64,000 bases of DNA from the IMG/VR virus record IMGVR_UViG_3300042558_004148, positions 124,001-188,000 of that record. One strand, written 5' to 3'. The notes under the pieces were generated by a model that saw nothing but the letters and a program-made list of their open reading frames with translations, was not told the DNA's origin and did no database searches. Positions 1 through 63,956 of the stretch are shown one piece after another. Each line of letters begins with the position of its first letter. The first letter of the stretch is position 1. The position numbers and the translations under genes are program-made.

Positions 1-291
1 CCTAAAGGATCAAGTAAAGAGGAGAAAAGTTCAAATAAGTTTACTAAGGACGAACTAAAAGCTAAAAAGACTGAAATCCTTAATAAATGGGAAAGGGATA
101 ATATTGGTGATAAAAAAGTTACCGATGCTGATGCTGAAAAGTTCTATAAATCTGGAGTGATCAAGGGTAAAAAATACTTCGGGAAGGATTTTGATCCAGC
201 AAACCCTAAGAATAAGGAAGAGGAAATGTACGCCGATTATATGAATGGTATAATGGAGAGGTATTATAAAAAGACAAGCAATGCACAATAA
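1..291 (+). CDS. hypothetical protein, 3' part (runs off the window)
   Basis: Frame 1 is open from base 1 to TAA at 289-291 (PKGSSKEEK...KTSNAQ*) and overlaps the next ATG; not in the ORF track. Confidence 0.6.
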   Translation, partial: PKGSSKEEKSSNKFTKDELKAKKTEILNKWERDNIGDKKVTDADAEKFYKSGVIKGKKYFGKDFDPANPKNKEEEMYADYMNGIMERYYKKTSNAQ

Positions 292-1204
292 AACGCTATC
301 ATTTAATAACTTTGTAATTTTATTAGAGGGTGGTGCCGCTATTAAAACATCTAGAAGAATAAGGGAGGATGAGTTTGAAGAAACACTAGCCTCAATAAAG
401 AGCATATTGTTGCCGATTATTGGTGTAAATCCCAATTCATCTGCTGGTGAATACATCGTTATTGGAAGCATAGGGAAAAAGAAAAATCCAGATGATACAT
501 CGGGTGATCTTGATCTTGGACTTGATTCTAATTTATTCAATGTGCCACTAAAGGAGGTATCTGGATATATTTATTCGATATTAAGTGGATCGGAAGAGCT
601 AACAAGCAAATTGGGATTCGAACCTGAAATAAATTATTTGAAGGGACTAAATATAGTAAGTATAGGATGGCCTATAAACGGTGATCAAACTAACGGAATT
701 GTACAGCTTGATTTAATACCCGTTGCTGATATGGAATGGGCAAAGTTTATCTACTATTCACCTGACTACAAAACATCTGAAAGTAAATATAAATCAGCTC
801 ATAGAAACTGGTTACTTGCTGCTATATTAGCAATACGTAGAATGGTATTGGATGTTAACGATGCTGGAGAAGTTATGGATTATGATTCACCTGTGCTGAT
901 ATTAAGCGATGGTTTATATTGGCATACTAAATCATACAGAGGCAAACTAAAACCTAGATTAAAGAATGCTGCCAAGATAAGCGGAAGCGAGAGATTTATA
1001 ACTAGAGATCCTCAGGAATTTATAGACTTTGCATTGGGTACAGGTTATTCAATCAATGACGTTAAAACATTCGAAAAGTTATACCAGATTATAGATTCAC
1101 CTAGTTTTGAACTTTATGATAAGGTTGGCGAAATAGAGGAAAAGTTCCTCGAATATATTACTAGAGCAAATTTAGAGAGGCCCTCCGAAATAAAAAGAGC
1201 TTAA
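281..1204 (+). CDS. Pol-beta-superfamily nucleotidyltransferase with N-terminal capsid-targeting-like motif
   Basis: GS..DxD signature (VIGSIGKK...SGDLDL) plus third Asp (VQLDLI); N-terminus KTLSFNNFVILLE. Confidence 0.65.
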   Translation: MHNKTLSFNNFVILLEGGAAIKTSRRIREDEFEETLASIKSILLPIIGVNPNSSAGEYIVIGSIGKKKNPDDTSGDLDLGLDSNLFNVPLKEVSGYIYSILSGSEELTSKLGFEPEINYLKGLNIVSIGWPINGDQTNGIVQLDLIPVADMEWAKFIYYSPDYKTSESKYKSAHRNWLLAAILAIRRMVLDVNDAGEVMDYDSPVLILSDGLYWHTKSYRGKLKPRLKNAAKISGSERFITRDPQEFIDFALGTGYSINDVKTFEKLYQIIDSPSFELYDKVGEIEEKFLEYITRANLERPSEIKRA

Positions 1205-1240
1205 TCTTATATAAATATAAAGATAAAATTAAAATTAAAT

Positions 1241-3322
1241 ATGTCTGGAATTAGCCACTTATATGATATTTACCATAAGAAAGGAAAAGAGTTTATTGAT
1301 AATCTCTTTAGTACTTATGTAACTGTTAATGAAAAAATGGATGGATCTGCTTTTGTTTTCGAAAGAGATGCTAACGATGGTAAATTTGTATTCTATAAGA
1401 GAGATCAGAGAAATCCGATAACAATGGTTGATAGAACCCTTATGAAATATTATGAGAAGCCTATCCAGTATATAGAATCTTTGAGTCCACACACAATAAG
1501 TAAAATCCCAAGAGGATGGAAATTTGGATTGGAATATTTTGCTAATAATAAGCCAGTCGAGATTGCTTACGATAGAATGCCAAAGAATAATCTTATATTG
1601 TCTTACGTTAGTCCTAAGGACTCTAAGCCTTCCAATAATTTTATAAATGACAAGGAGAAATTAGATACCTGGGCAGATCTTTTAGGAGTTGAGAGACCCC
1701 CGATTATTTTTCAAGGATATCTTAGTGAGGATCAGAAAGAAAAAATATCAGATTTTCTACGAACACCATTCGATGATTTGGTATCTGAGTATAAGACTAA
1801 GAGTTTTGTTAGGTATATCATAGGTGTACTAAATCCGGAAGCCAAGGAAAGCGCATTAAACGACGACCTTGATAAGGCCATAGAAGGAATAGTTTTTAAG
1901 TTTGGTGACGAGAAAGGTGAAGGTGAGACTGTTGTGTCAAAGATGGTAGATCCAGTATTTACCGAAATGGCAAAAAATAAAACCAAATTAAAGATTGAAA
2001 ATAAACCTAGTGATTTTCTGGGACTTACTGTTCTGGATGTTATGAATTTTATATTGGAATCTGGGGTTGATTCGTTTAGAATCGATGGAGATTCAGAAGA
2101 TGAGAGGTATATTTCGTTTGTTTCTGATGTATTTTCTAAATTCCTAGACGACTATGGCTATAAATATAAAGGTGCGGATTTTCAGGAACCTGATTATTTA
2201 AAGAAGGACGAATTCAGACTAAACAAGGAACTAATAAGAGATAGAAGAGTACTTAGCTATCTTGAGCAGGATGATTCATATGAATCATTATTTAAGTTAA
2301 TATTGAATTCTTTTAGAAAAATAAAGAAAAGAGCGGGTGGAATAATTACTGCTGGTATAATAAACCAGTTCAATATGCTGGTCTCTGATATACAAAAGGA
2401 AGTAGATAGAAAACAGACCCCAAAAATACAAGAATCCCAATCAGTCCCATCATTTTTTGATTTTAGAAAATCTAATATGTCAACCAAGAAAGTTGATTAT
2501 GTTACGTCTGAGAGTGAAAATGATGATCATAAGGACGATCACTTCTTTTCTTATAATGATTTTATATCAACATTGGAAACTATAGACACCAAGGAAAAGC
2601 CCGATGCTGAACCAATAGAAGAAAAAGATAAATCAGCCGAAAAGAAAGACAAAGAATTGCAGAAAGTAAATTTAATTGTTGGAAGATTTCAACCTTTCCA
2701 TAAAGGTCATCTTAAGATGGCTAATGACCTATTTAAAAAGAATAATCTGCCTTCGATAATAGCAGTAGTTCATCCTGGACATAATAAATCTGGTAAATCT
2801 CCATTTGATACTGATCTAGTTGATAAGTATATGGAATCAGTGGTTAGAGAGAATTCTAAAACTATATCCGGATATTTCATGGTAGATCGAGGATTACTCG
2901 GAATTATATACGGTAAAGCTAAACAGATGGGATACCTTCCCAAATATATAGGATGTGGTGATGATAGAACAGAAGATTACAAGAAGCAAGCAGAATATCT
3001 TAAGAAAGCTGGCGGTGATTTTCCTGATGATATAGAGATCATAGAGACTCCTAGAATCACCAGCGGATCGGAAGTTAGAGATATGATTGATGCGGAGGAT
3101 TTTGTAGCTTTTAAGAAGCTTGTTCCCCCATCAGTAGCATCGTTTTATCAGCAGTTAGTTTCTTCTAAGAAAGGAACCGGCGTTAATGAAGGTTTATCTG
3201 ACGATGAATTATCTGATTCTGAAAAAACGGATAAAACAGAAGTTATTAATTATCTGAATGAATATGGCGATGAGAAAACCATAGATGAGGTTAATAAAGA
3301 AATTAAAAATAACGAAGAATAA
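1241..3322 (+). CDS. fusion of RNA/DNA-ligase-type covalent nucleotidyltransferase and HIGH-family (cytidylyltransferase/NMNAT-like) domain
   Basis: Ligase motifs I EKMDG, III GLEYF, IV EGIVFK, V KMVD; C-terminal GRFQPFHKGH (HxGH) and TSGSEVR; acidic linker between the domains. Confidence 0.7.
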   Translation: MSGISHLYDIYHKKGKEFIDNLFSTYVTVNEKMDGSAFVFERDANDGKFVFYKRDQRNPITMVDRTLMKYYEKPIQYIESLSPHTISKIPRGWKFGLEYFANNKPVEIAYDRMPKNNLILSYVSPKDSKPSNNFINDKEKLDTWADLLGVERPPIIFQGYLSEDQKEKISDFLRTPFDDLVSEYKTKSFVRYIIGVLNPEAKESALNDDLDKAIEGIVFKFGDEKGEGETVVSKMVDPVFTEMAKNKTKLKIENKPSDFLGLTVLDVMNFILESGVDSFRIDGDSEDERYISFVSDVFSKFLDDYGYKYKGADFQEPDYLKKDEFRLNKELIRDRRVLSYLEQDDSYESLFKLILNSFRKIKKRAGGIITAGIINQFNMLVSDIQKEVDRKQTPKIQESQSVPSFFDFRKSNMSTKKVDYVTSESENDDHKDDHFFSYNDFISTLETIDTKEKPDAEPIEEKDKSAEKKDKELQKVNLIVGRFQPFHKGHLKMANDLFKKNNLPSIIAVVHPGHNKSGKSPFDTDLVDKYMESVVRENSKTISGYFMVDRGLLGIIYGKAKQMGYLPKYIGCGDDRTEDYKKQAEYLKKAGGDFPDDIEIIETPRITSGSEVRDMIDAEDFVAFKKLVPPSVASFYQQLVSSKKGTGVNEGLSDDELSDSEKTDKTEVINYLNEYGDEKTIDEVNKEIKNNEE

Positions 3323-3323
3323 A

Positions 3324-3863
3324 ATGACAAAAATTGCAACTTTCGGACAATTTGTAAGTAATATGAATGAGTCTGATGGATTTGGTACTTCCCCATTTCT
3401 AATGAAAAAAAACGGGGATTTATATCATTATTTCTTTAATCTTGATATGGAGAATGAAGAGGTTAGAGGATTCCACCTCATAATCGGGAAATATTCGGAT
3501 CATGGTAATATAGAAGGTGCTAAGAATTCGTATGGTGTACTAACATTAAATGAAATTTCACCGGAAGTAATAGAGGATATCGCTGTAGATAAGGAAGATA
3601 TCCCACAGACAGATAAGAATAAATTTAAGATGGGATCTAACGAGCTATCTAGGCTAATGGAGTATGTTTATAAATGTGTTACTGATTACTTGGAGCTTAA
3701 TTCAAAGGTAACTAGAATATATGACGAGATTCAAGATAATCTCCAGTATGAGGGTAAAGGTACATATATGGAATACATGAAATCTATGTCGGTTTCACAA
3801 TTAGGCGGAAATTGGTCAGTTCAGGAAGGATCTGATAAGAATTCAGTTATTCTTAGCAGATAA
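3324..3863 (+). CDS. hypothetical protein with capsid-targeting-like N-terminus
   Basis: ATG at 3324 right after the upstream stop; MTKIATFGQFVSNMNES. Confidence 0.6.
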   Translation: MTKIATFGQFVSNMNESDGFGTSPFLMKKNGDLYHYFFNLDMENEEVRGFHLIIGKYSDHGNIEGAKNSYGVLTLNEISPEVIEDIAVDKEDIPQTDKNKFKMGSNELSRLMEYVYKCVTDYLELNSKVTRIYDEIQDNLQYEGKGTYMEYMKSMSVSQLGGNWSVQEGSDKNSVILSR

Positions 3864-9743: not shown

Positions 9744-9773
9744 TCGACCAAATTATAGTTAGATATATAGATC

Positions 9774-10187
9774 ATGAGAAACATCAAGAGTTTTAAAGAC
9801 TATAATCCCAATGATGAATATAGGGTAGATTCAAGGAGGTCATTAGATCTTGATAGGGTAAGAAGAACCAAGGAATATAGAAGATTAATAAATCTTGGAT
9901 TTTCTGAGGAAACATCTGACCAGCAGGCTCTTAATAACACCATGAAGTTCGTAAGAACTAAACATAAGCAGAGGGAGAAGGGTCACAGTGATGTTTTTTA
10001 TACGATACATCCATCCGGAACAGTTAGAAGATATAATCCCATAAAATCCGATGATGTTCCACAGGGTAACGGTAACGATATAAAGAAATATATAATACCA
10101 TTCAGAAAATCATCAGATTATAAAAAGGCTCTAGATTACCTATGGCAATATATAAAGAGAAAAGAAGATAACGAAGACTTTAGATAA
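9774..10187 (+). CDS. hypothetical protein with capsid-targeting-like N-terminus
   Basis: MRNIKSFKDY; GATATATA at 9762-9769, only 4 nt before the ATG. Confidence 0.6.
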   Translation: MRNIKSFKDYNPNDEYRVDSRRSLDLDRVRRTKEYRRLINLGFSEETSDQQALNNTMKFVRTKHKQREKGHSDVFYTIHPSGTVRRYNPIKSDDVPQGNGNDIKKYIIPFRKSSDYKKALDYLWQYIKRKEDNEDFR

Positions 10188-11376: not shown

Positions 11377-12066
11377 TTATAAGTTTATTAACATCTCTAT
11401 TAATCTGGGACATGGGTAAATATCATCACGATCCATTCTAACATTAGAGTGTGACCATATTCCAGGATAACCCTCAAGAGCTTTTTTATTTATTTCGAAC
11501 GCTAAATTTGCATCGGATAATGAAAGAAGCTCTTTTTTTATTCCCTTAGATAAATCTATATCGAATTTATTACTAAGTTCCAATATAAGTATTCTTAATG
11601 ATTCTATTTGTGAATCCGTGTATGCTTGATAATATAGATTGCCTCTAAATGGATTATCAAGAGTGGTTACTAGACTTTCGTCAATTTCAACTCTACTATT
11701 GGTATAAAATCTGCCCTCTTTGGATCTAATTAGTGGTCCATAGTTGCATAATTCTATAGCTATGCTTTTTTGATTGATGAAGGTGTTATTTTTAGATTTT
11801 ATCCCTAGATGGTGTGACCAATATTTAGGATCGAATGATTCGTATATTTCCCCGTTATATAAATCTGAGGTTCCCATCGAACTTAATCCACCAATAACAT
11901 ATGATTTTGCGCTTCTAACCTTGCTACCACCTGTTGTCTCTTGTCTATCCCACGATTTAATAGTCCAATCGGGTCTATATGCTCCATTGGAGTGGTGAAG
12001 ATATATTGAATCCTTGGGTGTTTGCGTGGCAAAGAATTCGTCTGTTTGTAGGTGCTTTATGTTCAT
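11377..12066 (-). CDS. N-acetylmuramoyl-L-alanine amidase (Amidase_2)
   Basis: IYLHHS, WSHHLG, SIAIELCN, YTDSQIESL, WSHSNVR..R.DIYP zinc-amidase motifs; GATATATA on the minus strand at 12073-12080. Confidence 0.85.
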   Translation of the reverse strand: MNIKHLQTDEFFATQTPKDSIYLHHSNGAYRPDWTIKSWDRQETTGGSKVRSAKSYVIGGLSSMGTSDLYNGEIYESFDPKYWSHHLGIKSKNNTFINQKSIAIELCNYGPLIRSKEGRFYTNSRVEIDESLVTTLDNPFRGNLYYQAYTDSQIESLRILILELSNKFDIDLSKGIKKELLSLSDANLAFEINKKALEGYPGIWSHSNVRMDRDDIYPCPRLIEMLINL

Positions 12067-12136: not shown

Positions 12137-12529
12137 ATGGAAAGAGAAATTTTAATACAGGAGGAATATCTGGATTCACCATGGAAAATTATGGTTTGTT
12201 GCATATTATTGAATCAAACAAATAATAAACAGGTAAGACCGATTTTAAGCTCCGTATTTGATTTAATTCCAGATCCCATATCTACTATTGGATGTGATCC
12301 TTTGGATCTAGCAGCGGTCATAAAATGTACCGGATTTCAGAATATAAAGGCAAAGAGAATAATACAATTAAGTCAGAAATGGATATCTGGATTTACTGAC
12401 GTTAATGATTTACCTGGTATAGGTGTTTATGGTAGGGAATCCTGGGAAATATTCGTTAATAATAATATTTCAATAACACCAACCGATAAAAAATTAGCTA
12501 GATATATCAGTGATGTAACTGGATGCTAG
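12137..12529 (+). CDS. MBD4-like HhH-GPD DNA glycosylase (G:T/G:U mismatch)
   Basis: PWKIMVCCILLNQT, LPGIGVYGRESWEIF and PTDKKLARY align with the MBD4 glycosylase domain (PWKLLI..IFLNRT, LHGIGKYGNDSYRIF, PEDHKLNKY); no FeS cluster. Confidence 0.8.
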   Translation: MEREILIQEEYLDSPWKIMVCCILLNQTNNKQVRPILSSVFDLIPDPISTIGCDPLDLAAVIKCTGFQNIKAKRIIQLSQKWISGFTDVNDLPGIGVYGRESWEIFVNNNISITPTDKKLARYISDVTGC

Positions 12530-12831
12530 TTATTTTTTTTCGAACTTTTCTCGTTAAATGCCCCTTTGATATATTCAGCTACATCGGAGCCAGTTTTTTT
12601 ACCTTCCGATAGGAAATTATTAAATTCCTCTGATTTACCTTCGTTGTCTAGAAATTCATGGAAATACGAAGCTTCGTACATTGCATCCACCACTTCCGGT
12701 AAGGGTTGGTGTGCTGGTGTATAATTTCTGGAATTTACTCTTGGTGCATATTCGTTACCTGGAACATCAACGCTACCCGGAGCATCCAGCCATTCATTAA
12801 CACAATCTTTAAAGTTTTTGATATTTTTCAT
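12526..12831 (-). CDS. hypothetical protein with capsid-targeting-like N-terminus
   Basis: MKNIKNFKDCVNE; GATATATA on the minus strand at 12838-12845. Confidence 0.6.
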   Translation of the reverse strand: MKNIKNFKDCVNEWLDAPGSVDVPGNEYAPRVNSRNYTPAHQPLPEVVDAMYEASYFHEFLDNEGKSEEFNNFLSEGKKTGSDVAEYIKGAFNEKSSKKNN

Positions 12832-12906
12832 ATATTTTATATATCCGTACGGAACATAATTTTATTTCAGGATAAAACATTATAAAGAACCAGAAAAATA
12901 TAGTGA

Positions 12907-14307
12907 ATGATAATTGATATCGAAAACAAAGGATCATATTTAAAAGTCTCTCATTTCGGAGAAGAAGGCGAATTAGCATTTCTTAATGTACCAATAGCTG
13001 AAGATCAAAGATATAATTGGGAAAAGTGCGGTCCAAATGATCCCAAAAGGGATAAGGAATGGACTGATTGGACAGGTTTACCTGTAAGAAAAGCTAAGAC
13101 TGAAAGATACGATAAGTATCGAATGGCTCAGATATTAATAGAAGCACCCGAGGAATTAACTAAGCCATTATGGGAATTTCAAGAGCCTAAGAAATACTTT
13201 GTCGATATTGAGGTTGAGATAACTGAAGACATGGCAGCGGCATTGGATACAGAAAATGCTAGAAATCGTGTTTTATCAATAGGTATAGCTACCGATAAGA
13301 ATAAGATTATAGTTCTTGGATTAGATCCATTGACACCTGAACAACAAGCTAGCATATACAAGAAAACCAACGACTATTTTGCAAAAACTGGTGATACCTG
13401 GACTTTTAAATACAAACAGTTTGAAAGCGAGTATGACATGATGTACACATTCTTTAGAGAGCTTGGACCTAAAATGCCAGTTATAACTGGATGGAACTGG
13501 CTCGGATATGACTGGCCTTATTTAATGAACAGGGCAAAGAGACTTGGTATAGATCCAAAGATTATTTCACCTGGTAATTATTTAATAGGCAAAGCACAGT
13601 TACCTATGCACTTACTTATGTTTGACTACTTGGAAATCTACAAAAAATGGGATCGAGTAATCAAAATAAAGGAAAGTAATAGACTTGATTACGTTGCTGA
13701 AAAAGCAGCAGGATTTAAAAAGGTTGAATATAACGGAACACTTAGAGATTTATACCAATCCAATTTCGAAGACTTTATTTTCTATAACGCTGTCGATTGC
13801 GCACTTGTTCATTACATAGATCAGAAACTTAAAACAATGCAAACTTTCTTTAAGATTGCGATGATCTCGGGGGTGGAGATAAACAGATGTCTTTCACCAG
13901 TATGGTCAACGGAAGTTATGATGCTTAGAAAATTTCTTGATAGGAAACAGGTTTTTGTTGTTGAGAGAAAGGAAGAGGTTCATGTTAAGTTTGCTGGAGG
14001 ATACGTTAAGGAACCAATCAAGGGTCTGCATGAATGGATAGCATGCTACGATTTTGCTTCACTTTACCCTAATGCCATGGTTCAATGGGGGATTTCACCA
14101 GAAATATACAAGGGAAAAAATCTATCAAATCCCAGCGAGGATTGGGTGAAAACTGCATCCGGAGCATATTTTGGATCAGATGAAGAAAATCCAATTCTAA
14201 GAACGATCATTAAAGATCTATACTCCAGAAGGAGAAAAACAAAAGACAGAATGCTTGAGCTGGAGCTGGAAATAGACCAACTAAAAAAAGTTTTAGATAA
14301 AGAATAA
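12907..14307 (+). CDS. family-B DNA polymerase, N-terminal subunit (3'-5' exonuclease + motif A)
   Basis: ExoI VDIEVE, ExoII GWNWLGYDWPY, ExoIII YNAVD, GGYVKEP, motif A YDFASLYPN; ends in the fingers helix without motifs B or C. Confidence 0.9.
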   Translation: MIIDIENKGSYLKVSHFGEEGELAFLNVPIAEDQRYNWEKCGPNDPKRDKEWTDWTGLPVRKAKTERYDKYRMAQILIEAPEELTKPLWEFQEPKKYFVDIEVEITEDMAAALDTENARNRVLSIGIATDKNKIIVLGLDPLTPEQQASIYKKTNDYFAKTGDTWTFKYKQFESEYDMMYTFFRELGPKMPVITGWNWLGYDWPYLMNRAKRLGIDPKIISPGNYLIGKAQLPMHLLMFDYLEIYKKWDRVIKIKESNRLDYVAEKAAGFKKVEYNGTLRDLYQSNFEDFIFYNAVDCALVHYIDQKLKTMQTFFKIAMISGVEINRCLSPVWSTEVMMLRKFLDRKQVFVVERKEEVHVKFAGGYVKEPIKGLHEWIACYDFASLYPNAMVQWGISPEIYKGKNLSNPSEDWVKTASGAYFGSDEENPILRTIIKDLYSRRRKTKDRMLELELEIDQLKKVLDKE

Positions 14308-18405: not shown

Positions 18406-19035
18406 ATGGAATCTAAAATAAAAGCATTTAACGAATTTTTAAACGAAAGAGAACTTCCGGATAATCAGGGTAAAATCCTGGTTATTTTGGGAGCTCCCGG
18501 ATCAGGGAAGGGAACTCTATCAAAGGAACTAAATAAGGAATATGGTATACATCATATTTCAACCGGAGATCTTATTAGAAATTCAGACGATCCGGAATTA
18601 AAAAAAATAATATCAGGAGGCAACTTTATATCTGATGATATGATGGTAAAGATGCTAAGAGGTGAACTTAAAAAATTAGATCCTTCCAATGGAATTATTT
18701 TTGACGGATTTCCTAGAAATCTTAAGCAATCAAAAAAATTAGATTCAATCCTGGGAAAAATGGGGCTCGGTCTAAACCATGCCATATTTCTAGATCTGCC
18801 GGAGGATATCTCGAAGGAAAGAATTAGAGAAAGAGCTAAGAAGGAAAATAGAAAGGATGATGGTAGCGACGAGATAATAGATAAGAGATTCGAGGAATAT
18901 AATGATAAAACTTTACCTTTGTTGGACTTCTATAAGAAGAGCAGAAAATTAATTACAATAGATGCTAACACCGGGAGAGAAGGAGTCTTAAAATCAGTAG
19001 CTAAAAAACTAGGACTTAAAAAGCCAAAAAAATAA
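18406..19035 (+). CDS. adk: adenylate kinase (short LID) with capsid-targeting-like N-terminal extension
   Basis: GAPGSGKGT P-loop, HISTGDLIR, FDGFPR, R.DD; extension MESKIKAFNEFLNE. Confidence 0.9.
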   Translation: MESKIKAFNEFLNERELPDNQGKILVILGAPGSGKGTLSKELNKEYGIHHISTGDLIRNSDDPELKKIISGGNFISDDMMVKMLRGELKKLDPSNGIIFDGFPRNLKQSKKLDSILGKMGLGLNHAIFLDLPEDISKERIRERAKKENRKDDGSDEIIDKRFEEYNDKTLPLLDFYKKSRKLITIDANTGREGVLKSVAKKLGLKKPKK

Positions 19036-20986: not shown

Positions 20987-21017
20987 TGATATATAGAGAA
21001 AATAATTAGAAAGTAAA

Positions 21018-21569
21018 ATGAAACATCTTTTAGAATTTGATTCTTATTCTCCTATGGATGAAGCCGAGGTAAAAGCAGGAGTTCCAGTATATAACGAGGA
21101 TGAGTTCAATAAAAATACCAGTGCTAAACCAGCTATGGTCGTTAAAGTTCCTGAAATTATATCAGTTTTAAATAAATTTATTGCTGATCAGGAAAGTGGT
21201 GAAGTTGAAAAAATCGTAGTTCTAGCTGAGATTCCATCGCAAGGTAAAAATGCACCTAAGTATGTTCTTGATGATGCAGCAGCTGAAAGAGAAAGACAAA
21301 TACAAAGAAAAACCGCTATCTACGGAAGTAGAACGGAGAGATCTGATAGACCTGAAGACGACGAGCAAACAGATGCAATCAACATATTTGTTGATTCCGA
21401 GTTTATAGTAAAGGGAGTTATTAATAAATTAGGTAAAGATTATATTTTAGGTATCCCAGAATCTAAGAAAAAGAAAGCTGAATCTAGTAAAGAAATGATG
21501 GACTATTACACTGTTGAAATTGAACCTAGACAAGTATTTGAAATATTCTTCTCTCCTAAGGGAATGTAA
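21018..21569 (+). CDS. hypothetical protein with capsid-targeting-like N-terminus
   Basis: MKHLLEFDSY...DE; GATATATA at 20988-20995. Confidence 0.6.
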   Translation: MKHLLEFDSYSPMDEAEVKAGVPVYNEDEFNKNTSAKPAMVVKVPEIISVLNKFIADQESGEVEKIVVLAEIPSQGKNAPKYVLDDAAAERERQIQRKTAIYGSRTERSDRPEDDEQTDAINIFVDSEFIVKGVINKLGKDYILGIPESKKKKAESSKEMMDYYTVEIEPRQVFEIFFSPKGM

Positions 21570-30241: not shown

Positions 30242-30305
30242 GAAAGTCCAATTATAGATCTAATTGATCTTGATATATAGATGGTAAAATAATTAATATT
30301 AATTG

Positions 30306-31766
30306 ATGTTATTAAATAAGAAGGTATTAAATTTCGTTTCTTTCTTGAATGAATCAAAGACTGACGGAATAAAGGTTATAGTTCTTACTGGGAATGTAAA
30401 GGGTAGTAAAACATCTGAATCATTCAAGGAAGAATGTGAAAAAATGGGAGCTGAATGTCACGTTGTTGATGTGAACGAAGCTGTATTGGAAGCCGTGTAT
30501 AACGGACATCTTATAAAGATGGACGGAGAACAGATTCTGATAGATCCAAATTCGACTGTGATTGTTCCGCGAAGAGGTGTATTGGAAAATTCACACACTA
30601 AGCAAATATTGCTATCTTTGGAGGAAGCAAGGTATTTTACAGTAAATAGCTTGGAATCGATGGAGGTTTGCGAAAATAAATTCATTACATCGAAGATAAT
30701 GGAAGAGCATGGATTACCTGTTCCTAAATATGCTCTAGTACCCAACGAGGATGCACTTGATAGAGCACTTGAAGAGATTGGTGGTAAATTCCCGGTTATA
30801 ATGAAATTATTATCAGGAACACAAGGAATCGGAGTTTCTATAGTTGATTCCTATGCATCTTTAAAATCTGTATATCAAACAATCAGAAAACTTGATGATA
30901 CAAATGAGATATTGATACAGGAGAAAATTGATTCAAAATCTGATTTAAGAATTCAGGTAATAACCAAAAAAATAGATCCACTAAATCCAACTAAAGACAA
31001 TTGTATTATACTGGGATCTATGAAAAGGGATGCTGTTGATAAGGACTTTAGAACTAATTACTCTTTAGGTGGAAGCGTTTCTAAATACGAAATAGACGAT
31101 GAACTAGTAGATATCGCATGCAGAGCAGCTAATGCAGTAGGATGTCATTGGTGTGGAGTTGATATTATGATTGATAGTAAGACTAAAAAGCCTTACATTC
31201 TGGAAGTTAATTCATCCCCCGGTACTGAGGGTATATCTAAAGCTATAGGTAAACCGATTGTGGAGGATGTTCTTGATTATATACTAAACAAAGACAACTG
31301 GTCACAATCTGACCTTGAAATAGGATATCTCGAAACATTAACAGTTCCTGGAATTGGTAGAATGGTTGCTAAGTTTGATACTGGTAACGGTGCTAGATCT
31401 TGCACATTACATGCAGACGAAGTAGAAGAGCTGGATGGAAAATTAGTTTGGCAGGTTGGTAAGAAAAAATTTGTCAATGAAATAATTGAATATTCGGATG
31501 CTGAAGTTGGTAGGGACGTACACACAAGACCAGTTATAGAAATTGATTTAGTTTTTAATAATGTAACTGTACCTAAAGTAAAGGTATCTCCCGTTGATAG
31601 AACAGAGAAGAGCACACCGTTTTTAGCAAATAGAGCATTTATGAGAAAACTTGGATTAGTAGTTAATCCAGATAAAGCTTTCGTAGTAAGTGGTGAGCTA
31701 GAAGATAAATATAGTGCAGGATCATCTAAGGGTGAAGCCCATGCAGGAATAGAATTTGAAAAATAA
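30306..31766 (+). CDS. RimK-family ATP-grasp ligase fused to a RimB-like retropepsin protease
   Basis: ENKF, FPVIMK..GTQGIGV, IQE.I, DFRTNYSLGG, GVDIM, LEVNSSPG; C-terminal AKFDTGN...S..LHA...RPVI...DR....PFL.NR; N-terminus KVLNFVSFLNES; GATATATA at 30272. Confidence 0.88.
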   Translation: MLLNKKVLNFVSFLNESKTDGIKVIVLTGNVKGSKTSESFKEECEKMGAECHVVDVNEAVLEAVYNGHLIKMDGEQILIDPNSTVIVPRRGVLENSHTKQILLSLEEARYFTVNSLESMEVCENKFITSKIMEEHGLPVPKYALVPNEDALDRALEEIGGKFPVIMKLLSGTQGIGVSIVDSYASLKSVYQTIRKLDDTNEILIQEKIDSKSDLRIQVITKKIDPLNPTKDNCIILGSMKRDAVDKDFRTNYSLGGSVSKYEIDDELVDIACRAANAVGCHWCGVDIMIDSKTKKPYILEVNSSPGTEGISKAIGKPIVEDVLDYILNKDNWSQSDLEIGYLETLTVPGIGRMVAKFDTGNGARSCTLHADEVEELDGKLVWQVGKKKFVNEIIEYSDAEVGRDVHTRPVIEIDLVFNNVTVPKVKVSPVDRTEKSTPFLANRAFMRKLGLVVNPDKAFVVSGELEDKYSAGSSKGEAHAGIEFEK

Positions 31767-32342: not shown

Positions 32343-32376
32343 TTTTAAATTTTAAAATTAGTTAAATATATATCAC

Positions 32377-32697
32377 ATGAAAAAAATACTAGAATTTGAA
32401 GATTTTTTAGAGAATGATCTTGAATTAGACGAAGCTCAGAAAGCAATGCTTAGAGATTGGATCACTAAATATGAGAAATACTTTAATTTCCATGATAGTG
32501 GTAGTTTTATCGATTCCATAGACGATATAACTAATGATGCAATAGCACAATTAGGCATAGATAAGAGTAAGCATGATGCTGTCCAGAGTTACCTTGAAAG
32601 CCTATATGATCTCTCCGATGGCATATCAGTTATAATGGCTCCCGGAATAGAATTTCAATATACGAACATAGACCAGGTTCAGAGATTCCAATATTAA
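32377..32697 (+). CDS. hypothetical protein with capsid-targeting-like N-terminus
   Basis: MKKILEFEDFLE; AATATATA at 32365. Confidence 0.6.
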   Translation: MKKILEFEDFLENDLELDEAQKAMLRDWITKYEKYFNFHDSGSFIDSIDDITNDAIAQLGIDKSKHDAVQSYLESLYDLSDGISVIMAPGIEFQYTNIDQVQRFQY

Positions 32698-45746: not shown

Positions 45747-45782
45747 TATGGTATACCGATATATAATAAAAAAAGAAAACCT

Positions 45783-46223
45783 ATGAATAAAATAGCTTCA
45801 TTCGAAGATTTTAAAAAATCAAAAGCTGCACCTTCTATTAAGGAGGAGCATGGAGAAGAACATGGTGGTGATCCACAACATTATATGTTCTTTCAGAATC
45901 TTGCATCTATCAAACATTATATTGATGAGATTCTTAAAATGGAACCAGAGCAAGTTGATAACATGCTGAAAAATGGGCATGATTGGGCAGCTGATCATAT
46001 CGCTACATCTAAAGATGATATTCAGGAAGTTGCTGAGTGGATTAGAAATGAAATGGAAAATCCAGGTCACGAGGAGGAAAGCGGAGACGACGAACTAGCT
46101 GAACCTGAGGTAGATAATATCATCGTTAATATCGAGGGTGAAGATGATGATAAGGAAGATGAAGAAGAGGAAGACGACGATGAAGATGAAGATGATGACG
46201 AAGAGGAGGAAGAAGAAGCTTAA
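45783..46223 (+). CDS. acidic-tail protein with capsid-targeting-like N-terminus
   Basis: MNKIASFEDF; GHDWAADHI core; poly-D/E tail; GATATATA at 45758. Confidence 0.65.
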   Translation: MNKIASFEDFKKSKAAPSIKEEHGEEHGGDPQHYMFFQNLASIKHYIDEILKMEPEQVDNMLKNGHDWAADHIATSKDDIQEVAEWIRNEMENPGHEEESGDDELAEPEVDNIIVNIEGEDDDKEDEEEEDDDEDEDDDEEEEEEA

Positions 46224-56131: not shown

Positions 56132-56154
56132 TTAAATAAACTGATATATACTGC

Positions 56155-57564
56155 ATGGAAAAAGTATATAATTTTAATCAGTTTTCAAAACTGTACGAAT
56201 CGCAATCTTCTAATTTACAAAATATTATAATTGGAGATTCTCTAACCCCGCTAATTGCTAAGAATTCTATTGATGTGGATATTTTAGGTCCGGTTGGATC
56301 TGAAGCTAACTTATGGAAATCCGGTGTTAATACAGAATGGCTTAAAAAAGCTGTTGCTAAATTTCCAACAACACAATCCATCAAGAATGTAGTAATAAAA
56401 ATTGGTACTAATAGCGGATTTAGTATCAGGGATGACGTGAGAGGTCTATTTATAGAGCTAAGAAGGGCATTCCCAGAAGCCAAATTCTTTGTGGTACAGG
56501 GATCTTGGGGATGGGGGAATAACAAGAATGTTACTGCTGCCAAAGTGAAAGCTTATTATGAGCTTTTCTCTAAAGAGGGAGCAACGGTAATAGAACCGCC
56601 AGTTGGATATTCACCAACATCTGCAAAGGCACATAGTGAAACTCAAGCAATTAAGGAGATCGGTAAGAATTTAGACCTTGCTATACAGGAGAGTGTAAAT
56701 AATTCAATTTTGGAAACCCCGACACTGACAGATTCAGAGATAATTGTAAGAAAGGGTGATCCATATAAATATAAGGTTGTTAATGATCATTGGTTAGCTA
56801 AGAGAGACGACCAGTCAAGATGGTATGAAATTACAGGTAAGGATTTCAAACCAGGATTTCAGGTATCCATAAATATTCTAGATTCAGAAAATCCAACGCT
56901 TAGATCAAACGTTGCACCAAAGAGAGAAAATAGAATTAAATCAGGAGAGGTTAACAAGGATATTGAAACTGACGAAACATTTCTACCACTAGGTCTCGGT
57001 GCTGATCCAGAAAAGATAGATCCTAGAATTGCAGAAAAATATAATTTCCATATAATCCCGGACGGTAAAAAAACTAATTACAGGAGTGCTCAGTTTCCTC
57101 TTGATATCATGAGGAACGTTTATACTAAATATAACGTTAAAAACGTAATTAGGTTAAATGATGATGGGAAGGATGGTAAACATCTACCTCTTCAGAGATC
57201 AGTTTCAATAGAAAAAGAGATGGAATTATGCAAAGAAATAGGATGCGATTTCTATAAGCTCTCGCCAACGGAAGATCAGGATAAGATAAATGAATTATTA
57301 TCCAAGGGAAACACACTAATACATTGTGCACATGGATCTGATAGAACTGGAGGATCTGTTGGGGGATATCTATATAAAACTAAATTAAATCCAGAATTAT
57401 CTACCACTGAAAATATATGGAAATATACAACCCAATATAATGATTGGAATAGCATCGTTACTAAGAATCCGGATGATTTTTTGGATGATGTTTATTTGAA
57501 ACAAGCTCAGAAATTCGGAGTAAAAGATATAGAGGATGCAAAAAGACTCGCTAAACTAAATTAA
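56155..57564 (+). CDS. SGNH-like domain + protein-tyrosine/dual-specificity phosphatase fusion with capsid-targeting-like N-terminus
   Basis: IIIGDSL and IGTN (SGNH blocks); YRSAQ and IHCAHGSDRTG (CX5R); MEKVYNFNQFSKLYES; GATATATA at 56143. Confidence 0.75.
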   Translation: MEKVYNFNQFSKLYESQSSNLQNIIIGDSLTPLIAKNSIDVDILGPVGSEANLWKSGVNTEWLKKAVAKFPTTQSIKNVVIKIGTNSGFSIRDDVRGLFIELRRAFPEAKFFVVQGSWGWGNNKNVTAAKVKAYYELFSKEGATVIEPPVGYSPTSAKAHSETQAIKEIGKNLDLAIQESVNNSILETPTLTDSEIIVRKGDPYKYKVVNDHWLAKRDDQSRWYEITGKDFKPGFQVSINILDSENPTLRSNVAPKRENRIKSGEVNKDIETDETFLPLGLGADPEKIDPRIAEKYNFHIIPDGKKTNYRSAQFPLDIMRNVYTKYNVKNVIRLNDDGKDGKHLPLQRSVSIEKEMELCKEIGCDFYKLSPTEDQDKINELLSKGNTLIHCAHGSDRTGGSVGGYLYKTKLNPELSTTENIWKYTTQYNDWNSIVTKNPDDFLDDVYLKQAQKFGVKDIEDAKRLAKLN

Positions 57565-59996: not shown

Positions 59997-60818
59997 TTAT
60001 TTTAAAAGAGAATAATACTCTTTGAAGTGCTTAATTCTATCAGCTAAGCCAATTGTACCTCCATTAACTCTTTTAGTAACTGAGGTAACAACAGCATCAG
60101 TAGCTCCTTGATCACAAATAGACCAAAGTTTATTGTTGTTGAAGAACCAAGCTGCAGAAGCCAATGGATATTTAGTTGAAACTAAATCTGGATTTGCTAA
60201 GATATCATCATCAACGAATTTATCGAATGAAGTGTAATTAGCTTTACCTGTTAATTGGATATAACCTCTACCTCTAAATTTAAAACCTTCTTTAGAAGCT
60301 TCGTCACCGTTACCCATTCTTCCACCATAAACTCTTGCAGCAATCTTTTCAGGTTGTCTTGCATAAGATTCATTAAGTGTACCTGGGAAATATTTTGGAA
60401 AAATCTTTTTAAGACCATCCGCAGAGTAGTTAAGGTTTTCACTAACTGCTTTAAATCCGCCAGATTCATGACCACACTGAGCTAAAAAGTGAGCAAGTCT
60501 TAGTACATTACTAATCCCAAATTTTGAAGCAGTAGCAGGAATTTGTGCAATAACTGCATCAGGAATATGACCTTTAAGAGCTGCCAATTTAAAATCAGAA
60601 GCAGGTATAGCAACTGGAGCAGCAGCAACTGGAGCAGCACCAAATAATTTAGTCCATGTTCCATCACCAACAACGCCATCAGCAGTTAATCCATTAGCTG
60701 CTTGCCATGCTTTAACCTTAGCTTCAGTACCCGGACCGAAAGCTCCATCAGCAGCTAATCCTAATTTAGCTTGGAGTTTTTTTACGTCTTCTCCTTTAGA
60801 CCCATTCTTTAATAACAT
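59997..60818 (-). CDS. endolysin: PG_binding_1 domain + GH19 (chitinase-like) muramidase
   Basis: LKNGSKGEDVKKLQ...DG.FGPGT; AHFLAQCGHESGGF, ENLNYS, RGRGYIQLTG, VNGGTIGL.DR. Confidence 0.93.
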   Translation of the reverse strand: MLLKNGSKGEDVKKLQAKLGLAADGAFGPGTEAKVKAWQAANGLTADGVVGDGTWTKLFGAAPVAAAPVAIPASDFKLAALKGHIPDAVIAQIPATASKFGISNVLRLAHFLAQCGHESGGFKAVSENLNYSADGLKKIFPKYFPGTLNESYARQPEKIAARVYGGRMGNGDEASKEGFKFRGRGYIQLTGKANYTSFDKFVDDDILANPDLVSTKYPLASAAWFFNNNKLWSICDQGATDAVVTSVTKRVNGGTIGLADRIKHFKEYYSLLK

Positions 60819-62694: not shown

Positions 62695-62702
62695 AATCCA
62701 TA

Positions 62703-62754
62703 TAAAAACAAAAAACCCTAGATAAAATATTATCTAGGGTTTTTTTGTTTTTTA
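62703..62754. terminator. bidirectional terminator
   Basis: AAAAAACCCTAGATAA/TTATCTAGGGTTTTTT between convergent genes. Confidence 0.8.
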
Positions 62755-62762
62755 TGTTACGA

Positions 62763-63956
62763 TTAAGCTATAACGCTAGAATTTAATTGAATTACTGCCT
62801 GAGCTATAATGATTTTATCAGCCTTGTTTGAATCTTCAGATGCCATATAAACTAATTCAGGAGTTGTTTTATCAACTGGTGCTAAATATTCACCCTCAAC
62901 ATTAAGTGTAACTCTTCTCCAGGTCTTTCTGTCTTCAGTACTTGCTTTTGGTTGAATGTCTAATTTATCAGAAACCTTAACATCAGCAGCCTTGAAAGAG
63001 GTAGTTGATTTAATATAATCAGCAACCGCTTGAGCTCTTTCTTTACAAAGTGCTTCGTTTCTAGCTTTATCACCTTCTTGTGATGCACCACCAGTAACAG
63101 TAATACTATTAGCTGAAGCAACGTTACCTAGTGCTGCTAATATTGCAGCTTTACCTTCTTCTTTAAGAACTGATTTATTAACATCAAAAAGAGTGTTATC
63201 ATCCTGAATAACGATAGGTTTTAATGTTTCTGCAGTTGTTGTTTTTTGTCTTACGAACTGTATAATCTCCCTAGATTCATATTCAACACCACCTTGTGGA
63301 ACGATCTTAACAGGGTAATAGAAATAGTATTGTACAGATACATCTGATGAACCTTTTCTATCGGCAGGCTGTGGCTCGCTAACGAATCCAGATGGTGTCT
63401 TTAATAATTGATTCTTAACTGGACTATCATATCTCCACACTTTAGCGTCAAGTTTAGCTTGATTATCTACAATAAGGTATTGATTAACTGGACCTGATCC
63501 CGAAAGGAAATCACCATCATTTTTCTCACCTGATGTGAATTTCTTTTTACCGCTATCGTAATATGGATCCTTAAATCCACCAATATTTTTTAGGTTTAAT
63601 TTGGCTAAATATTGGGCAAACCCTATTCTTTTACCCGATCCATCAAGAACTGAACCACCCAAAAGATTCTTATATTCAAATTCTTGTAGATCGAAATCGA
63701 TGCTAGAAATCTCAGTTGCATCGGTTCTTGTCATATCTGATAGACAGCTACTAATACGACCCAAAGGTATTGCTTGTGAATAATTACCCTGATTAATTAC
63801 TTCCTCGATAGCACCTAATGCCTTTCTTCCTTTAGCATCCAGACCTTCAGCAGCTAATGCTGTTTTAAGTTCAGTGAAATCGCTTACTTTTAATCCTTCA
63901 TTAATAGCAAATTTTAAGAACTCGCTAAAGCTCTCGAATACTGGTTTATTTTCCAT
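62763..63956 (-). CDS. OmpA-C-like peptidoglycan-binding domain protein with capsid-targeting-like N-terminus
   Basis: LFDVNKSVLK...ITVTGGAS.EG...RN..L...RAQAVADY...RRV; no signal peptide; MENKPVFESFSEFLKFAINE; GATATATA on the minus strand at 63987-63994. Confidence 0.7.
   Translation of the reverse strand: MENKPVFESFSEFLKFAINEGLKVSDFTELKTALAAEGLDAKGRKALGAIEEVINQGNYSQAIPLGRISSCLSDMTRTDATEISSIDFDLQEFEYKNLLGGSVLDGSGKRIGFAQYLAKLNLKNIGGFKDPYYDSGKKKFTSGEKNDGDFLSGSGPVNQYLIVDNQAKLDAKVWRYDSPVKNQLLKTPSGFVSEPQPADRKGSSDVSVQYYFYYPVKIVPQGGVEYESREIIQFVRQKTTTAETLKPIVIQDDNTLFDVNKSVLKEEGKAAILAALGNVASANSITVTGGASQEGDKARNEALCKERAQAVADYIKSTTSFKAADVKVSDKLDIQPKASTEDRKTWRRVTLNVEGEYLAPVDKTTPELVYMASEDSNKADKIIIAQAVIQLNSSVIA

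What the first reader, a model, noticed from the sequence alone, without database searches (positions are those of the whole stretch)
281..63956. Genome-wide set of enzymes tagged with a T4 capsid-targeting-like motif: a possible packaged, injected enzyme cargo
Seen: a motif of roughly K-[ILV]-x-x-[FY]-x-x-[FYW], often followed within about 6 aa by [LMIVY]-x-E, starts unrelated proteins: 281 KTLSFNNF..LLE, 3324 KIATFGQF..MNE, 9774 NIKSFKDY, 12831(-) NIKNFKDCVNE, 18406 KIKAFNEFLNE, 21018 HLLEFDSY, 30306 KVLNFVSFLNE, 32377 KILEFEDFLE, 45783 KIASFEDF, 56155 KVYNFNQF..LYE, 63956(-) VFESFSEF..INE. Most sit directly behind GATATATA/AATATATA. Known: T4 internal proteins carry MKT[YF]xEF..E, are packaged into the head, cleaved after Glu by gp21 and injected. 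Inference: this phage packages catalytic cargo (nucleotidyltransferase, adenylate kinase, RimK-protease, SGNH-phosphatase, OmpA-like protein) that acts before any phage transcription. In Adk and RimK the motif is an extension in front of the normal enzyme start.
Basis: partly seen in the sequence, partly recalled or inferred. Interest (0 to 1): 0.8.

Follow-up and report, generated by a model that had tools for sequence, protein, structure and literature searches.

The report
Capsid-address tags on many phage proteins
A huge uncultivated T4-like phage puts the same short N-terminal peptide on about 30 unrelated proteins, and that peptide matches both phage T4's capsid-targeting tag and the repeat unit of this phage's own scaffold, so these proteins (several of them enzymes) are probably loaded into the head and delivered with the DNA, though no experiment has shown this.

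Summary
All 11 N-termini read as reported. The window's contig is part of a complete 373-kb genome. In the 155 kb of that genome that nobody had looked at, 12 more strict tags occur against 0.16 expected. In total about 30 strict (42 loose) of 541 genes carry the tag. Apart from one paralogous pair, the rest of each tagged protein is unrelated to the others.

The tag has two parts: an aromatic pair at i and i+3, then hydrophobic-x-Glu (mostly L-N-E) within 12 residues. Orthologues conserve it at the amino-acid level with free synonymous change. It maps residue for residue onto T4's MKTYQEFIAE, where residues 4 and 7 target and 8 and 10 are processed.

The phage has a gp23-type capsid protein, whose propeptide ends YCHYHSLNE|S, and a gp21-type protease fused to a scaffold. 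That scaffold contains 12 to 14 copies of YSEYLAE, which is the tag heptad.

Identified cargo: adenylate kinase, RimK-type ligase, Pol-beta-like nucleotidyltransferase, SGNH plus Cys-phosphatase, two SLT, CHAP, and PG-binding and OmpA-like proteins.

The mechanism is the known T4 one, in an expanded form. Packaging, cleavage and injection are inferred, not shown.

The parts
281..1204 (+). Tagged gene, 307 aa, Pol-beta-like nucleotidyltransferase. Tag MHNKTLSFNNFVILLE|GG (nt 281-328).
   Evidence: In 21 orthologues F8, F11, E16 and the GS..DLD motif are invariant. In the AF2 model residues 1-17 are disordered, and the fold matches Cid1, CutA, GLD-2 and TdT.
3324..3863 (+). Tagged gene, 179 aa, function unknown. 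Tag MTKIATFGQFVSNMNE|SD (nt 3324-3371).
   Evidence: No Pfam or PHROG match. The ATG lies 2 nt after the stop of the preceding gene.
9762..9769 (+). GATATATA promoter-like box, 4 nt before the ATG at 9774.
9774..10187 (+). Tagged gene, 137 aa, unknown. N-terminus MRNIKSFKDYNPNDE. No clear hydrophobic-x-E close by.
12526..12831 (-). Tagged gene, 101 aa, unknown. Tag MKNIKNFKDCVNE|W (nt 12831-12793).
12838..12845 (-). GATATATA box, 6 nt before the ATG at 12831.
18406..19035 (+). Tagged adenylate kinase, 209 aa. Tag MESKIKAFNEFLNE|RELPD (nt 18406-18447). The enzyme fold starts at residue 27.
   Evidence: PF00406, E 6e-37, residues 27-179. The 15 distinct orthologous sequences keep I-K-x-F-x-x-F (both Phe in 15/15), and 13 of them have L-N-E-RELPD, with synonymous codon changes. 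It lies downstream of both ribonucleotide reductase subunits.
20988..20995 (+). GATATATA box, 22 nt before the ATG at 21018.
21018..21569 (+). Tagged gene, 183 aa, unknown. Tag MKHLLEFDSYSPMDE|AE (nt 21018-21062).
30272..30279 (+). GATATATA box, 26 nt before the ATG at 30306. Conserved upstream of the orthologues.
30306..31766 (+). Tagged RimK-type ATP-grasp ligase, 486 aa. Tag MLLNKKVLNFVSFLNE|SK (nt 30306-30353). The pre-ATP-grasp domain starts at residue 23.
   Evidence: PF08443, E 3.6e-35. In 31 orthologues (49-100% identity) N and E of the tag are invariant, and Leu uses 6 codons.
32365..32372 (+). AATATATA box, 4 nt before the ATG at 32377. Being palindromic, it also faces the divergent gene on the other strand.
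32377..32697 (+). Tagged gene, 106 aa, unknown. Tag MKKILEFEDFLE|ND.
45758..45765 (+). GATATATA box, 17 nt before the ATG at 45783.
45783..46223 (+). Tagged gene, 146 aa, unknown. N-terminus MNKIASFEDFKKSKAAPSIKE|EH.
56143..56150 (+). GATATATA box, 4 nt before the ATG at 56155.
56155..57564 (+). Tagged two-domain enzyme, 469 aa. Tag MEKVYNFNQFSKLYE|SQ. An SGNH-type hydrolase (IIIGDS, GTN blocks) is followed by a Cys phosphatase (invariant HCAHGxDRTGG).
   Evidence: Orthologues at 51-58% identity keep F-x-x-[FY]-x-x-[IL]-x-E. Foldseek on a low-confidence model hits PAF-AH, TesA, CE2 and Siw14.
62763..63956 (-). Tagged OmpA-like peptidoglycan-binding protein, 397 aa. N-terminus MENKPVFESFSEFLKFAINE|G.
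   Evidence: PF00691, E 1.3e-8, residues 256-338..
63987..63994 (-). GATATATA box, 30 nt before the ATG at 63956.

Best explanation
The motif is a capsid (prohead-core) targeting propeptide of the T4 type, used much more widely than in T4.

Proposed steps:
1. Tagged genes are transcribed from [GA]ATATATA promoters, the same box that precedes the head and tail genes.
2. The N-terminal peptide is an aromatic pair at i and i+3 on a short amphipathic stretch. It is one copy of the unit that the scaffold repeats 12-14 times (YSEYLAE) and that ends the capsid protein's propeptide (YCHYHSLNE). It therefore binds the growing scaffold core, and the protein is enclosed when the shell closes.
3. The gp21-family protease, made as the N-terminal part of the scaffold protein, cuts after Glu in hydrophobic-x-Glu. 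This chops the scaffold, matures the capsid protein and releases each cargo protein from its tag.
4. The freed proteins stay in the head and leave through the tail with the DNA.

On this model, peptidoglycan-active cargo (2 SLT, CHAP, PG-binding, OmpA-like) would act in the envelope. Cytoplasmic enzymes (adenylate kinase, ATP-grasp ligase, nucleotidyltransferase, SGNH-phosphatase) would act at the very start of infection.

Shown by sequence: the tag, its selection, its portability, the protease and capsid genes, and the shared heptad. Inferred: binding, cleavage, retention, ejection, and what the enzymes do.
For: - Tag enrichment holds up in an unseen part of the genome.
- Only one paralogous pair exists among the 42 mature parts.
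- Orthologues conserve the tag at the protein level with synonymous variation.
- The tag lies outside the enzyme folds.
- The genome has a gp23-family capsid protein and an S77/S80 protease fused to the scaffold.
- In T4 IPIII, residues 4 and 7 (Y, F) target and residues 8 and 10 (I, E) are processed (PMC9026906; sequence MKTYQEFIAE in PMC8442874, and in the T4 genome). This is the same layout as F-x-x-F-L-N-E.
- Hydrophobic-x-E follows 26 of 30 tags, mostly L-N-E.
- The capsid propeptide ends HSLNE|SAGAY unchanged in the ~50 distinct capsid N-termini that include this region.
- The strict heptad occurs 46 times in the proteome against 20.7 expected. The whole excess is 14 N-terminal copies plus 12 scaffold copies.
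- Scaffolds of 49 relatives have 10-14 copies each.
- PTm1 and Lak-C1 scaffolds have none, and those phages show no tag enrichment. LR756500 has degenerate copies and 28 tags against 10.7 expected.
- In T4 the same heptad sits exactly at the gp23 maturation site, FGSFLTE.
- Three tagged genes directly follow the capsid gene.
- Promoter association has P 7e-8.
- Five tagged proteins are peptidoglycan-active, which suits ejected proteins.
Against: - There are no protein data of any kind. Packaging, cleavage and injection are untested.
- Adenylate kinase sits in a ribonucleotide reductase operon, where an ordinary intracellular role would be enough.
- Mature cargo is not basic (median pI 6.2 against 5.7 for other proteins), unlike the T4 internal proteins.
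- Depletion of internal L-N-E sites in the cargo is only a trend (0 against about 2-3 expected, P about 0.06).
- Four of 30 strict tags lack a nearby hydrophobic-x-E.
- Thirty to forty different packaged proteins with one short tag has no precedent.
- The timing of the GATATATA promoter is assumed.
Confidence: 0.65

Rival explanations
1. The tag does bring proteins into the prohead core and is cut by the protease. However, most tagged proteins are assembly helpers or core fillers that are degraded or expelled at maturation. They are not a delivered enzyme cargo.
For: - In T4, gp22, gp67 and gp68 enter the core and are cut to fragments that leave (PMC5694885).
- The three tagged genes next to the capsid gene include a 380-aa coiled-coil protein.
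- Most tagged proteins have no recognisable function.
- Generic hydrophobic-x-E sites are common inside the cargo, 18.8 per 1000 aa.
Against: - Folded enzymes with intact catalytic motifs (P-loop, ATP-grasp, GS..DLD, GDS, CX5R) are conserved behind the tag.
- The preferred L-N-E site is absent from the mature parts.
- Cell-wall hydrolases have no obvious job inside a prohead.
Confidence: 0.17
2. The peptide is an address or docking signal for something other than the head. Examples are a replication or nucleotide-synthesis complex, a membrane site, or a phage-made compartment. Alternatively it is a pro-sequence removed by a Glu-specific protease to activate proteins in the cytoplasm.
For: - Adenylate kinase lies in the ribonucleotide reductase operon, and the window is a replication and nucleotide module.
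- The GATATATA box is not limited to structural genes.
- The cargo is not basic.
Against: - The same heptad builds the scaffold and ends the capsid propeptide.
- T4 gives an experimentally proven precedent for exactly this layout.
- The tagged proteins mix periplasm-acting and ATP-dependent enzymes, which no single cellular destination suits.
- Phages whose scaffolds lack the heptad show no tag enrichment.
Confidence: 0.12
3. The motif is not a protein signal at all. It is either a by-product of AT-rich codon usage at gene starts or an RNA-level element for translation of short-leader mRNAs.
For: - The genome is 35% GC.
- Leaders are very short (4-30 nt after the box) and have no Shine-Dalgarno sequence.
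- The motif is rich in Lys, Asn, Ile and Phe.
Against: - Shuffles and internal windows give about 4 against 19 observed.
- The AT-richer controls PTm1 (30% GC) and Lak-C1 (26% GC) show no enrichment.
- Orthologues keep the amino acids while the codons vary: Leu uses 6 codons, and Asn is AAT 17 times and AAC 14 times.
- The distance from the ATG to the motif varies.
- The same heptad occurs 12 times inside the scaffold protein.
Confidence: 0.02

Closest known systems
[quoted passage not shown]
   Same: - An N-terminal propeptide of 10-20 residues with an aromatic pair at i and i+3, then hydrophobic-x-Glu.
- A gp21-family protease and a gp23-family capsid protein.
- The tag is the only part shared among otherwise unrelated proteins.
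- The heptad also sits at the capsid protein's maturation site.
   Different: - About 30-40 tagged genes here, against a handful in T4.
- The P2 residue is mostly Asn.
- The spacer between the aromatic pair and the cut site varies from 0 to 8 residues.
- The cargo is not basic and includes metabolic and cell-wall enzymes.
- The scaffold is fused to the protease and is built of tag-like repeats.
- Capsid-protein identity to its nearest named relatives is only 31-46%, and the host is probably a member of the Bacteroidota.
T4 Alt, a packaged ADP-ribosyltransferase
   Same: It is an enzyme carried in the head, processed by gp21 after Glu and injected with the DNA (PMC5694885).
   Different: Alt loses only 6 N-terminal residues (ITE-6) and also a C-terminal propeptide. 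None of the enzymes identified here is an ADP-ribosyltransferase.
Ejection and inner-body proteins of phiKZ, 201phi2-1 and SPN3US
   Same: These are jumbo phages with dozens of head proteins. Many are cut after Glu by a gp21-related protease and ejected. The protease here also matches Pfam S80.
   Different: Their cut motif has a small residue at P3 (S/A/G-x-E). Their propeptides are often over 100 residues. No short common N-terminal tag is described for them.
T7 gp16 internal core protein with a lytic transglycosylase domain
   Same: It is a head-internal, ejected protein carrying an SLT domain that opens the cell wall (general knowledge, not tested here). Two tagged SLT proteins occur in this phage.
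   Different: T7 has no targeting tag or prohead protease of this kind. The relation is functional analogy only.

Membership tests
T4-type capsid targeting sequence (CTS) propeptide | Lies at the extreme N-terminus, is about 10-20 residues long and sits outside the folded domain | tested here: met
   The motif starts at residues 2-8. The ADK fold starts at residue 27 and RimK_N at residue 23. Residues 1-17 of the nucleotidyltransferase model have pLDDT below 50.
T4-type capsid targeting sequence (CTS) propeptide | Targeting determinants are two aromatic residues three apart (T4 IPIII residues 4 and 7) | tested here: met
   [FY]-x-x-[FYWC] is present in all 11 window tags. F8 and F11 are invariant in 21 orthologues. 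F is present in 29/31 and 28/31 RimK orthologues. The T4 rule comes from PMC9026906.
T4-type capsid targeting sequence (CTS) propeptide | Processing site is hydrophobic-x-Glu right after the targeting residues (T4 residues 8 and 10) | tested here: met
   Present within 12 residues in 26 of 30 tags against 125 of 511 controls (P 7e-12). P3 is mostly L and P2 mostly N. This is sequence only; cleavage was not observed.
T4-type capsid targeting sequence (CTS) propeptide | The genome encodes a gp21-family prohead protease and a gp23-family capsid protein with a propeptide ending in the same motif | tested here: met
   PF03420, 32-34 bits, above the cut-off. PF07068, E 2e-40. The propeptide ends YCHYHSLNE|SAGAY in every relative whose capsid N-terminus was recovered.
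T4-type capsid targeting sequence (CTS) propeptide | The tag is portable: it is shared by proteins that are otherwise unrelated | tested here: met
   There is one BLASTP pair at E < 1e-3 among the 42 mature parts. The folds include ADK, ATP-grasp, Pol-beta nucleotidyltransferase, SGNH, SLT, CHAP and OmpA.
T4-type capsid targeting sequence (CTS) propeptide | The tag is sufficient to bring a protein into the head, is removed by the protease, and the protein is injected | not testable with these tools
   This needs virion proteomics or reporter fusions. The phage is known only from metagenomes.
T4 internal proteins IPI-IPIII (small basic DNA-associated proteins) | The mature protein is small and strongly basic | tested here: not met
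   The mature parts have median pI 6.2, and one third are above pI 8. Lengths run from 67 to 486 aa.
phiKZ-type processed head proteins | Cleavage motif S/A/G-x-E with a small P3 residue | tested here: not met
   P3 is L, V, I, F or M in 26 of 26 predicted sites. The motif rule comes from PMC9026906.
Adenylate kinase (PF00406) | Full-length match above the curated cut-off, with a P-loop | tested here: met
   127.5 bits against a cut-off of 26.8, profile positions 1-149 of 151. The sequence GAPGSGKGT is present.
RimK-type ATP-grasp ligase (PF08443) | Full-length ATP-grasp match above the curated cut-off | tested here: met
   121.7 bits against a cut-off of 21, profile positions 2-188 of 188. 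The C-terminal 160 residues are unassigned.

The most novel reading that the evidence does not exclude
This clade of huge phages has turned the T4 capsid-targeting peptide into a general address label that is a single copy of its own scaffold repeat. With it the phage loads 30 or more different proteins (about 7,000 residues of distinct sequence) into the head. These include ATP-using metabolic enzymes, a nucleotidyltransferase, a phosphatase and several cell-wall enzymes. If so, the virion arrives with a ready-made takeover kit, and the packaged proteome of an uncultivated phage can be read directly from its genome.
Probability: 0.45. Interest if true: 0.8.

Novelty: new variant of a known kind. 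Interest (0 to 1): 0.62.

Why it matters
Which proteins a phage injects with its DNA is usually learned only from virion proteomics of cultured phages. Here a short, testable sequence rule predicts the packaged set for a whole family of uncultivated phages of up to about 430 kb.

The predicted set is unusual. It includes adenylate kinase, a RimK-like ligase, a nucleotidyltransferase, an SGNH-phosphatase and five peptidoglycan-active proteins.

The match between the tag, the scaffold repeat and the capsid propeptide end also suggests how targeting works physically: the tag mimics the scaffold repeat unit. The T4 papers read here do not describe how the tag binds the core, so this may bear on T4 as well.

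The tag could also serve as a tool for loading foreign proteins into such capsids, as the T4 tag already does.

Tried and rejected
- Near-identical DNA search against named phages found nothing. No isolate is closer than 46% capsid-protein identity, so no virion proteome could be borrowed.
- A matrix trained only on the 11 window tags and tested on the rest of the contig gave weak significance (4 against 0.86, P 0.011). It was replaced by the test on the unseen 155 kb and by a neutral pattern.
- Scoring the T4 tag with my matrix was invalid, because the T4 tag begins too close to the Met. I compared the two directly instead.
- The test for depletion of internal L-N-E sites in the cargo was inconclusive.
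- The idea that cargo would be basic like the T4 internal proteins was rejected.
- I looked for the tag in PTm1 and Lak-C1 and found no enrichment. They now serve as negative controls.
- Pfam, PHROGs and a PDB profile search gave nothing for most small tagged proteins or for the phosphatase half of the gene at 56155.
- The AF2 model of that protein is low confidence (pLDDT 61), so its fold matches are supporting evidence only.
- Literature searches for a capsid-targeting tag in megaphages or jumbo phages from metagenomes found no prior description.
- I did not use read mapping, the large protein-database searches or RNA tools, because none bears on packaging.
Full report
WHAT THE WINDOW IS

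The 64-kb window is the reverse strand of positions 29160-93159 of a 217,893-bp viral contig with 34.6% GC. That contig is 99.94% identical to positions 155721-373456 of a complete 373,467-bp genome with direct terminal repeats (handle G001).

The phage is T4-like in its head genes:
- It has a gp23-family major capsid protein (PF07068, E 2e-40).
- It has a gp21-family prohead protease (PF03420, above the cut-off).

No named phage matches at the DNA level. The nearest capsid proteins are:
- an uncultured 462-kb phage, LR756500, at 46% identity;
- the Prevotella Lak megaphages, at 44%;
- Flavobacterium and Tenacibaculum phages, at 31%.

Together with the lack of Shine-Dalgarno sequences, this points to a host in the Bacteroidota. 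That is an inference. IMG/VR holds a large family of relatives with 72-100% capsid-protein identity and contigs up to 434 kb.

The window itself is a replication and nucleotide-metabolism module. It carries a split family-B DNA polymerase, a dUTPase-like gene, both ribonucleotide reductase subunits, topoisomerase II, UvdE, DnaJ, thymidylate synthase, an IMPDH/GMP-reductase-like gene and an RNA-ligase-like gene.

CHECK OF THE OBSERVATION

All eleven N-termini read as reported. Eight have [GA]ATATATA 4-30 nt upstream.

The motif is far more common than chance allows:
- It occurs in 19 of 253 genes, against 3.9 +/- 1.9 in shuffled N-termini and 4.3 predicted from internal windows.
In the 155.7 kb of the complete genome that lies outside the contig, a scoring matrix at threshold 12 finds 12 of 287 N-termini against 0.16 expected (P 4e-19).
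- In the whole genome about 30 genes are tagged at a strict threshold and 42 at a loose one, out of 541.
- A pattern that makes no use of this phage's preferences (aromatic pair, then hydrophobic-x-Glu) gives 40 N-terminal hits against 10.8 expected here, and 28 against 10.7 in LR756500.
- The same pattern gives no excess in T4 (7 against 4.7), Tenacibaculum phage PTm1 (4 against 6) or Lak-C1 read with TAG as Gln (10 against 8.4). The last two are even more AT-rich, so base composition is not the cause.

THE TAG IS A SELECTED, PORTABLE PEPTIDE

- Among the 42 tagged proteins, the parts behind the tag share only one paralogous pair, two SLT-domain proteins.
- The tag persists in orthologues from other contigs while codons change freely. 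In 31 RimK orthologues (49-100% identity) the consensus is V-L-[DN]-F-x-S-F-L-N-E-[AS]. Asn and Glu are invariant, Leu is written with six codons, and Asn is split 17 AAT to 14 AAC.
- The 15 distinct adenylate kinase orthologues keep I-K-x-F-x-x-F (both Phe invariant), and 13 of them continue L-N-E-RELPD.
- The nucleotidyltransferase family keeps F8, F11 and E16 in 21 of 21 sequences.
- The SGNH-phosphatase family keeps F-x-x-[FY]-x-x-[IL]-x-E at only 51-58% overall identity.
- The tag lies in front of the enzyme folds and is predicted to be disordered.

An RNA-level or compositional explanation is therefore rejected.

ANATOMY OF THE TAG

The tag has two parts. First comes a hydrophobic residue and an aromatic pair spaced i and i+3. 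Then, 0-8 residues later, comes hydrophobic-x-Glu. That site is present in 26 of 30 strict tags against 125 of 511 other N-termini (P 7e-12). P3 is mostly Leu, P2 is Asn in 12 of 26, and P1' is mostly Ala or Ser.

There is a short class (F-x-x-F-L-N-E) and a long class (F-x-x-F-x-x-L-x-E).

LINK TO THE HEAD

1. The T4 rule. In T4 the ten-residue capsid targeting sequence MKTYQEFIAE is sufficient to load foreign proteins into the head. Residues 4 and 7 carry the targeting and residues 8 and 10 the processing by gp21 (PMC8442874; PMC9026906). I confirmed the sequence at two genes in the T4 genome. The layout Y-x-x-F-I-x-E is the short class here, position for position.

2. The capsid protein. 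Its N-terminal region aligns with the T4 gp23 propeptide and ends YCHYHSLNE|SAGAY, unchanged in every one of the ~50 distinct relative N-termini that include this region. This is a long-class tag at the expected maturation site. In T4 the same heptad, FGSFLTE, sits exactly at the known gp23 cleavage site.

3. The protease and scaffold. The protease is the N-terminal third of a 656-aa protein. The rest of that protein is a scaffold holding twelve exact copies of Y-x-x-Y-[LVI]-x-E in a 14-residue repeat (YSEYLAENLDKNIS), followed by several L-N-E sites.

4. Where the heptad excess lies. Across the whole proteome the strict heptad occurs 46 times against 20.7 +/- 4.5 in shuffles. The whole excess is 14 copies at N-termini and 12 in the scaffold. 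Scaffolds of 49 relatives carry 10-14 copies each.

5. Comparison across phages. LR756500, which has the tag excess, has degenerate copies in its scaffold. PTm1 and Lak-C1, which have no excess, have none. This is two genomes against two, so it is suggestive only.

6. Gene neighbourhood and promoter. Three tagged genes follow the capsid gene directly. Tagged genes are tied to the [GA]ATATATA box: 13 of 17 against 33 of 236, P 7e-8. The box also precedes the capsid, scaffold, portal-region and tail genes. Inside the replication module of the window, about half of these boxes belong to tagged genes. This reads as though each tagged gene carries its own promoter of the structural class.

WHAT THE TAGGED PROTEINS ARE

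- By Pfam: adenylate kinase and a RimK-type ATP-grasp ligase.
- By Pfam: an OmpA-like protein and an SLT transglycosylase.
- By Pfam, in the unseen part of the genome: a second SLT, a CHAP peptidase and a PG_binding_1 protein.
- The 307-aa protein at 281 has the GS...DLD signature of Pol-beta-type nucleotidyltransferases. Its model (pLDDT 80) matches only such enzymes, although weakly.
- The 469-aa protein at 56155 has SGNH blocks and an invariant HCAHGxDRTGG Cys-phosphatase loop. A low-confidence model hits SGNH esterases and the Siw14 phosphatase.
- About two thirds of the tagged proteins have no assignable function.
- The mature parts are not basic.

MOST LIKELY MECHANISM

The tag is a single copy of the unit by which the scaffold and the capsid propeptide interact in the prohead core. 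It recruits the protein into the core. The protease then cuts after Glu, destroying the scaffold and freeing the cargo, which stays in the head and leaves with the DNA.

The envelope-active cargo fits a role in crossing the cell wall. The cytoplasmic enzymes fit a role at the start of infection.

Confidence levels:
- That the peptide is a real, selected signal: about 0.97.
- That it is a prohead-targeting, protease-cut propeptide: about 0.65-0.7.
- That the enzymes are delivered and act early: about 0.45-0.5.

POINTS AGAINST, AND OPEN QUESTIONS

- There are no protein-level data.
- Adenylate kinase lies in the ribonucleotide reductase operon, behind a GATATATA box. Either that box is not strictly late, or these genes are also expressed late.
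- Internal L-N-E sites are absent from the cargo, but the deficit is not significant.
- Four strict tags lack a clear cut site.
- The number of tagged proteins is larger than in any described system.

COMPARISON WITH WHAT IS KNOWN

The mechanism is that of the T4 capsid targeting sequence. The T4 literature already notes that related phages use it to pack varied proteins, so this is not a new kind of system.

What is new:
- the phylogenetic distance from T4;
- the roughly tenfold larger repertoire;
- the enzyme content of the cargo;
- the observation that the tag equals the scaffold repeat.

I found no description of this in papers on megaphages or jumbo phages.

Noticed in passing
window 12907-14307 (+) and 28622-29770 (+): The family-B DNA polymerase is split into two genes 14 kb apart. 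The first holds the exonuclease domain and polymerase profile positions 16-152, the second positions 132-451. Ribonucleotide reductase, adenylate kinase, topoisomerase II, UvdE and DnaJ lie between them.
   Followed up: partly
L160:7-1977 (-), which is contig positions 164306-166276, outside the window: The prohead protease and the scaffold are one 656-aa reading frame. Two in-frame internal ATGs each lie behind their own [GA]ATATATA box, which suggests nested shorter scaffold products. Its N-terminus, MPTTQKLNE, has a cut-type site at Glu9, where T4 gp21 has LIE-9. PTm1 is annotated with the same protease-scaffold fusion.
   Followed up: partly
window 9762-9774, 32365-32377, 56143-56155: In several genes the [GA]ATATATA box ends only 4 nt before the ATG. 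If the box acts like the T4 late -10 element, these mRNAs would have almost no leader. The box is palindromic and in places faces divergent genes on both strands, for example at window 32365.
   Followed up: no
T4 genome NC_000866, 18966-19130 (-), locus L269: The T4 hypothetical protein gp61.1 (54 aa) starts MKTFKEFIKE. This is close to the internal-protein targeting sequence MKTYQEFIAE.
   Followed up: partly
contig positions about 212900-215000 and 216450-217893 (G001 about 368600-373460), outside the window: The self-alignment shows many offset matches at 78-88% identity near the genome end. This indicates a block of diverged tandem repeats next to the terminal repeat.
   Followed up: no
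window 24996-26018 (+), 42526-43584 (+), 48790-50010 (+): The window encodes a full-length DnaJ with J, zinc-finger and C-terminal domains, an IMPDH/GMP-reductase-like protein, and a thymidylate synthase of 406 aa. The thymidylate synthase match stretches over residues 6-326 for 235 profile positions, which suggests an insertion.
   Followed up: no
window 59997-60818 (-) and 11377-12066 (-): Two genes behind [GA]ATATATA boxes have no tag and look like cell-wall enzymes from their N-terminal sequences only. One begins with a PG-binding-like LQAKLGLAADGAFG. They may be the true endolysins, as distinct from the tagged SLT and CHAP proteins. I did not run family searches on them.
   Followed up: no
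window 1241-3322 (+): A 693-aa protein lies between two tagged genes. It has weak matches to RNA ligase (below the cut-off) and to a cytidylyltransferase-like domain (just above it). It sits in the same operon as the tagged nucleotidyltransferase.
   Followed up: no
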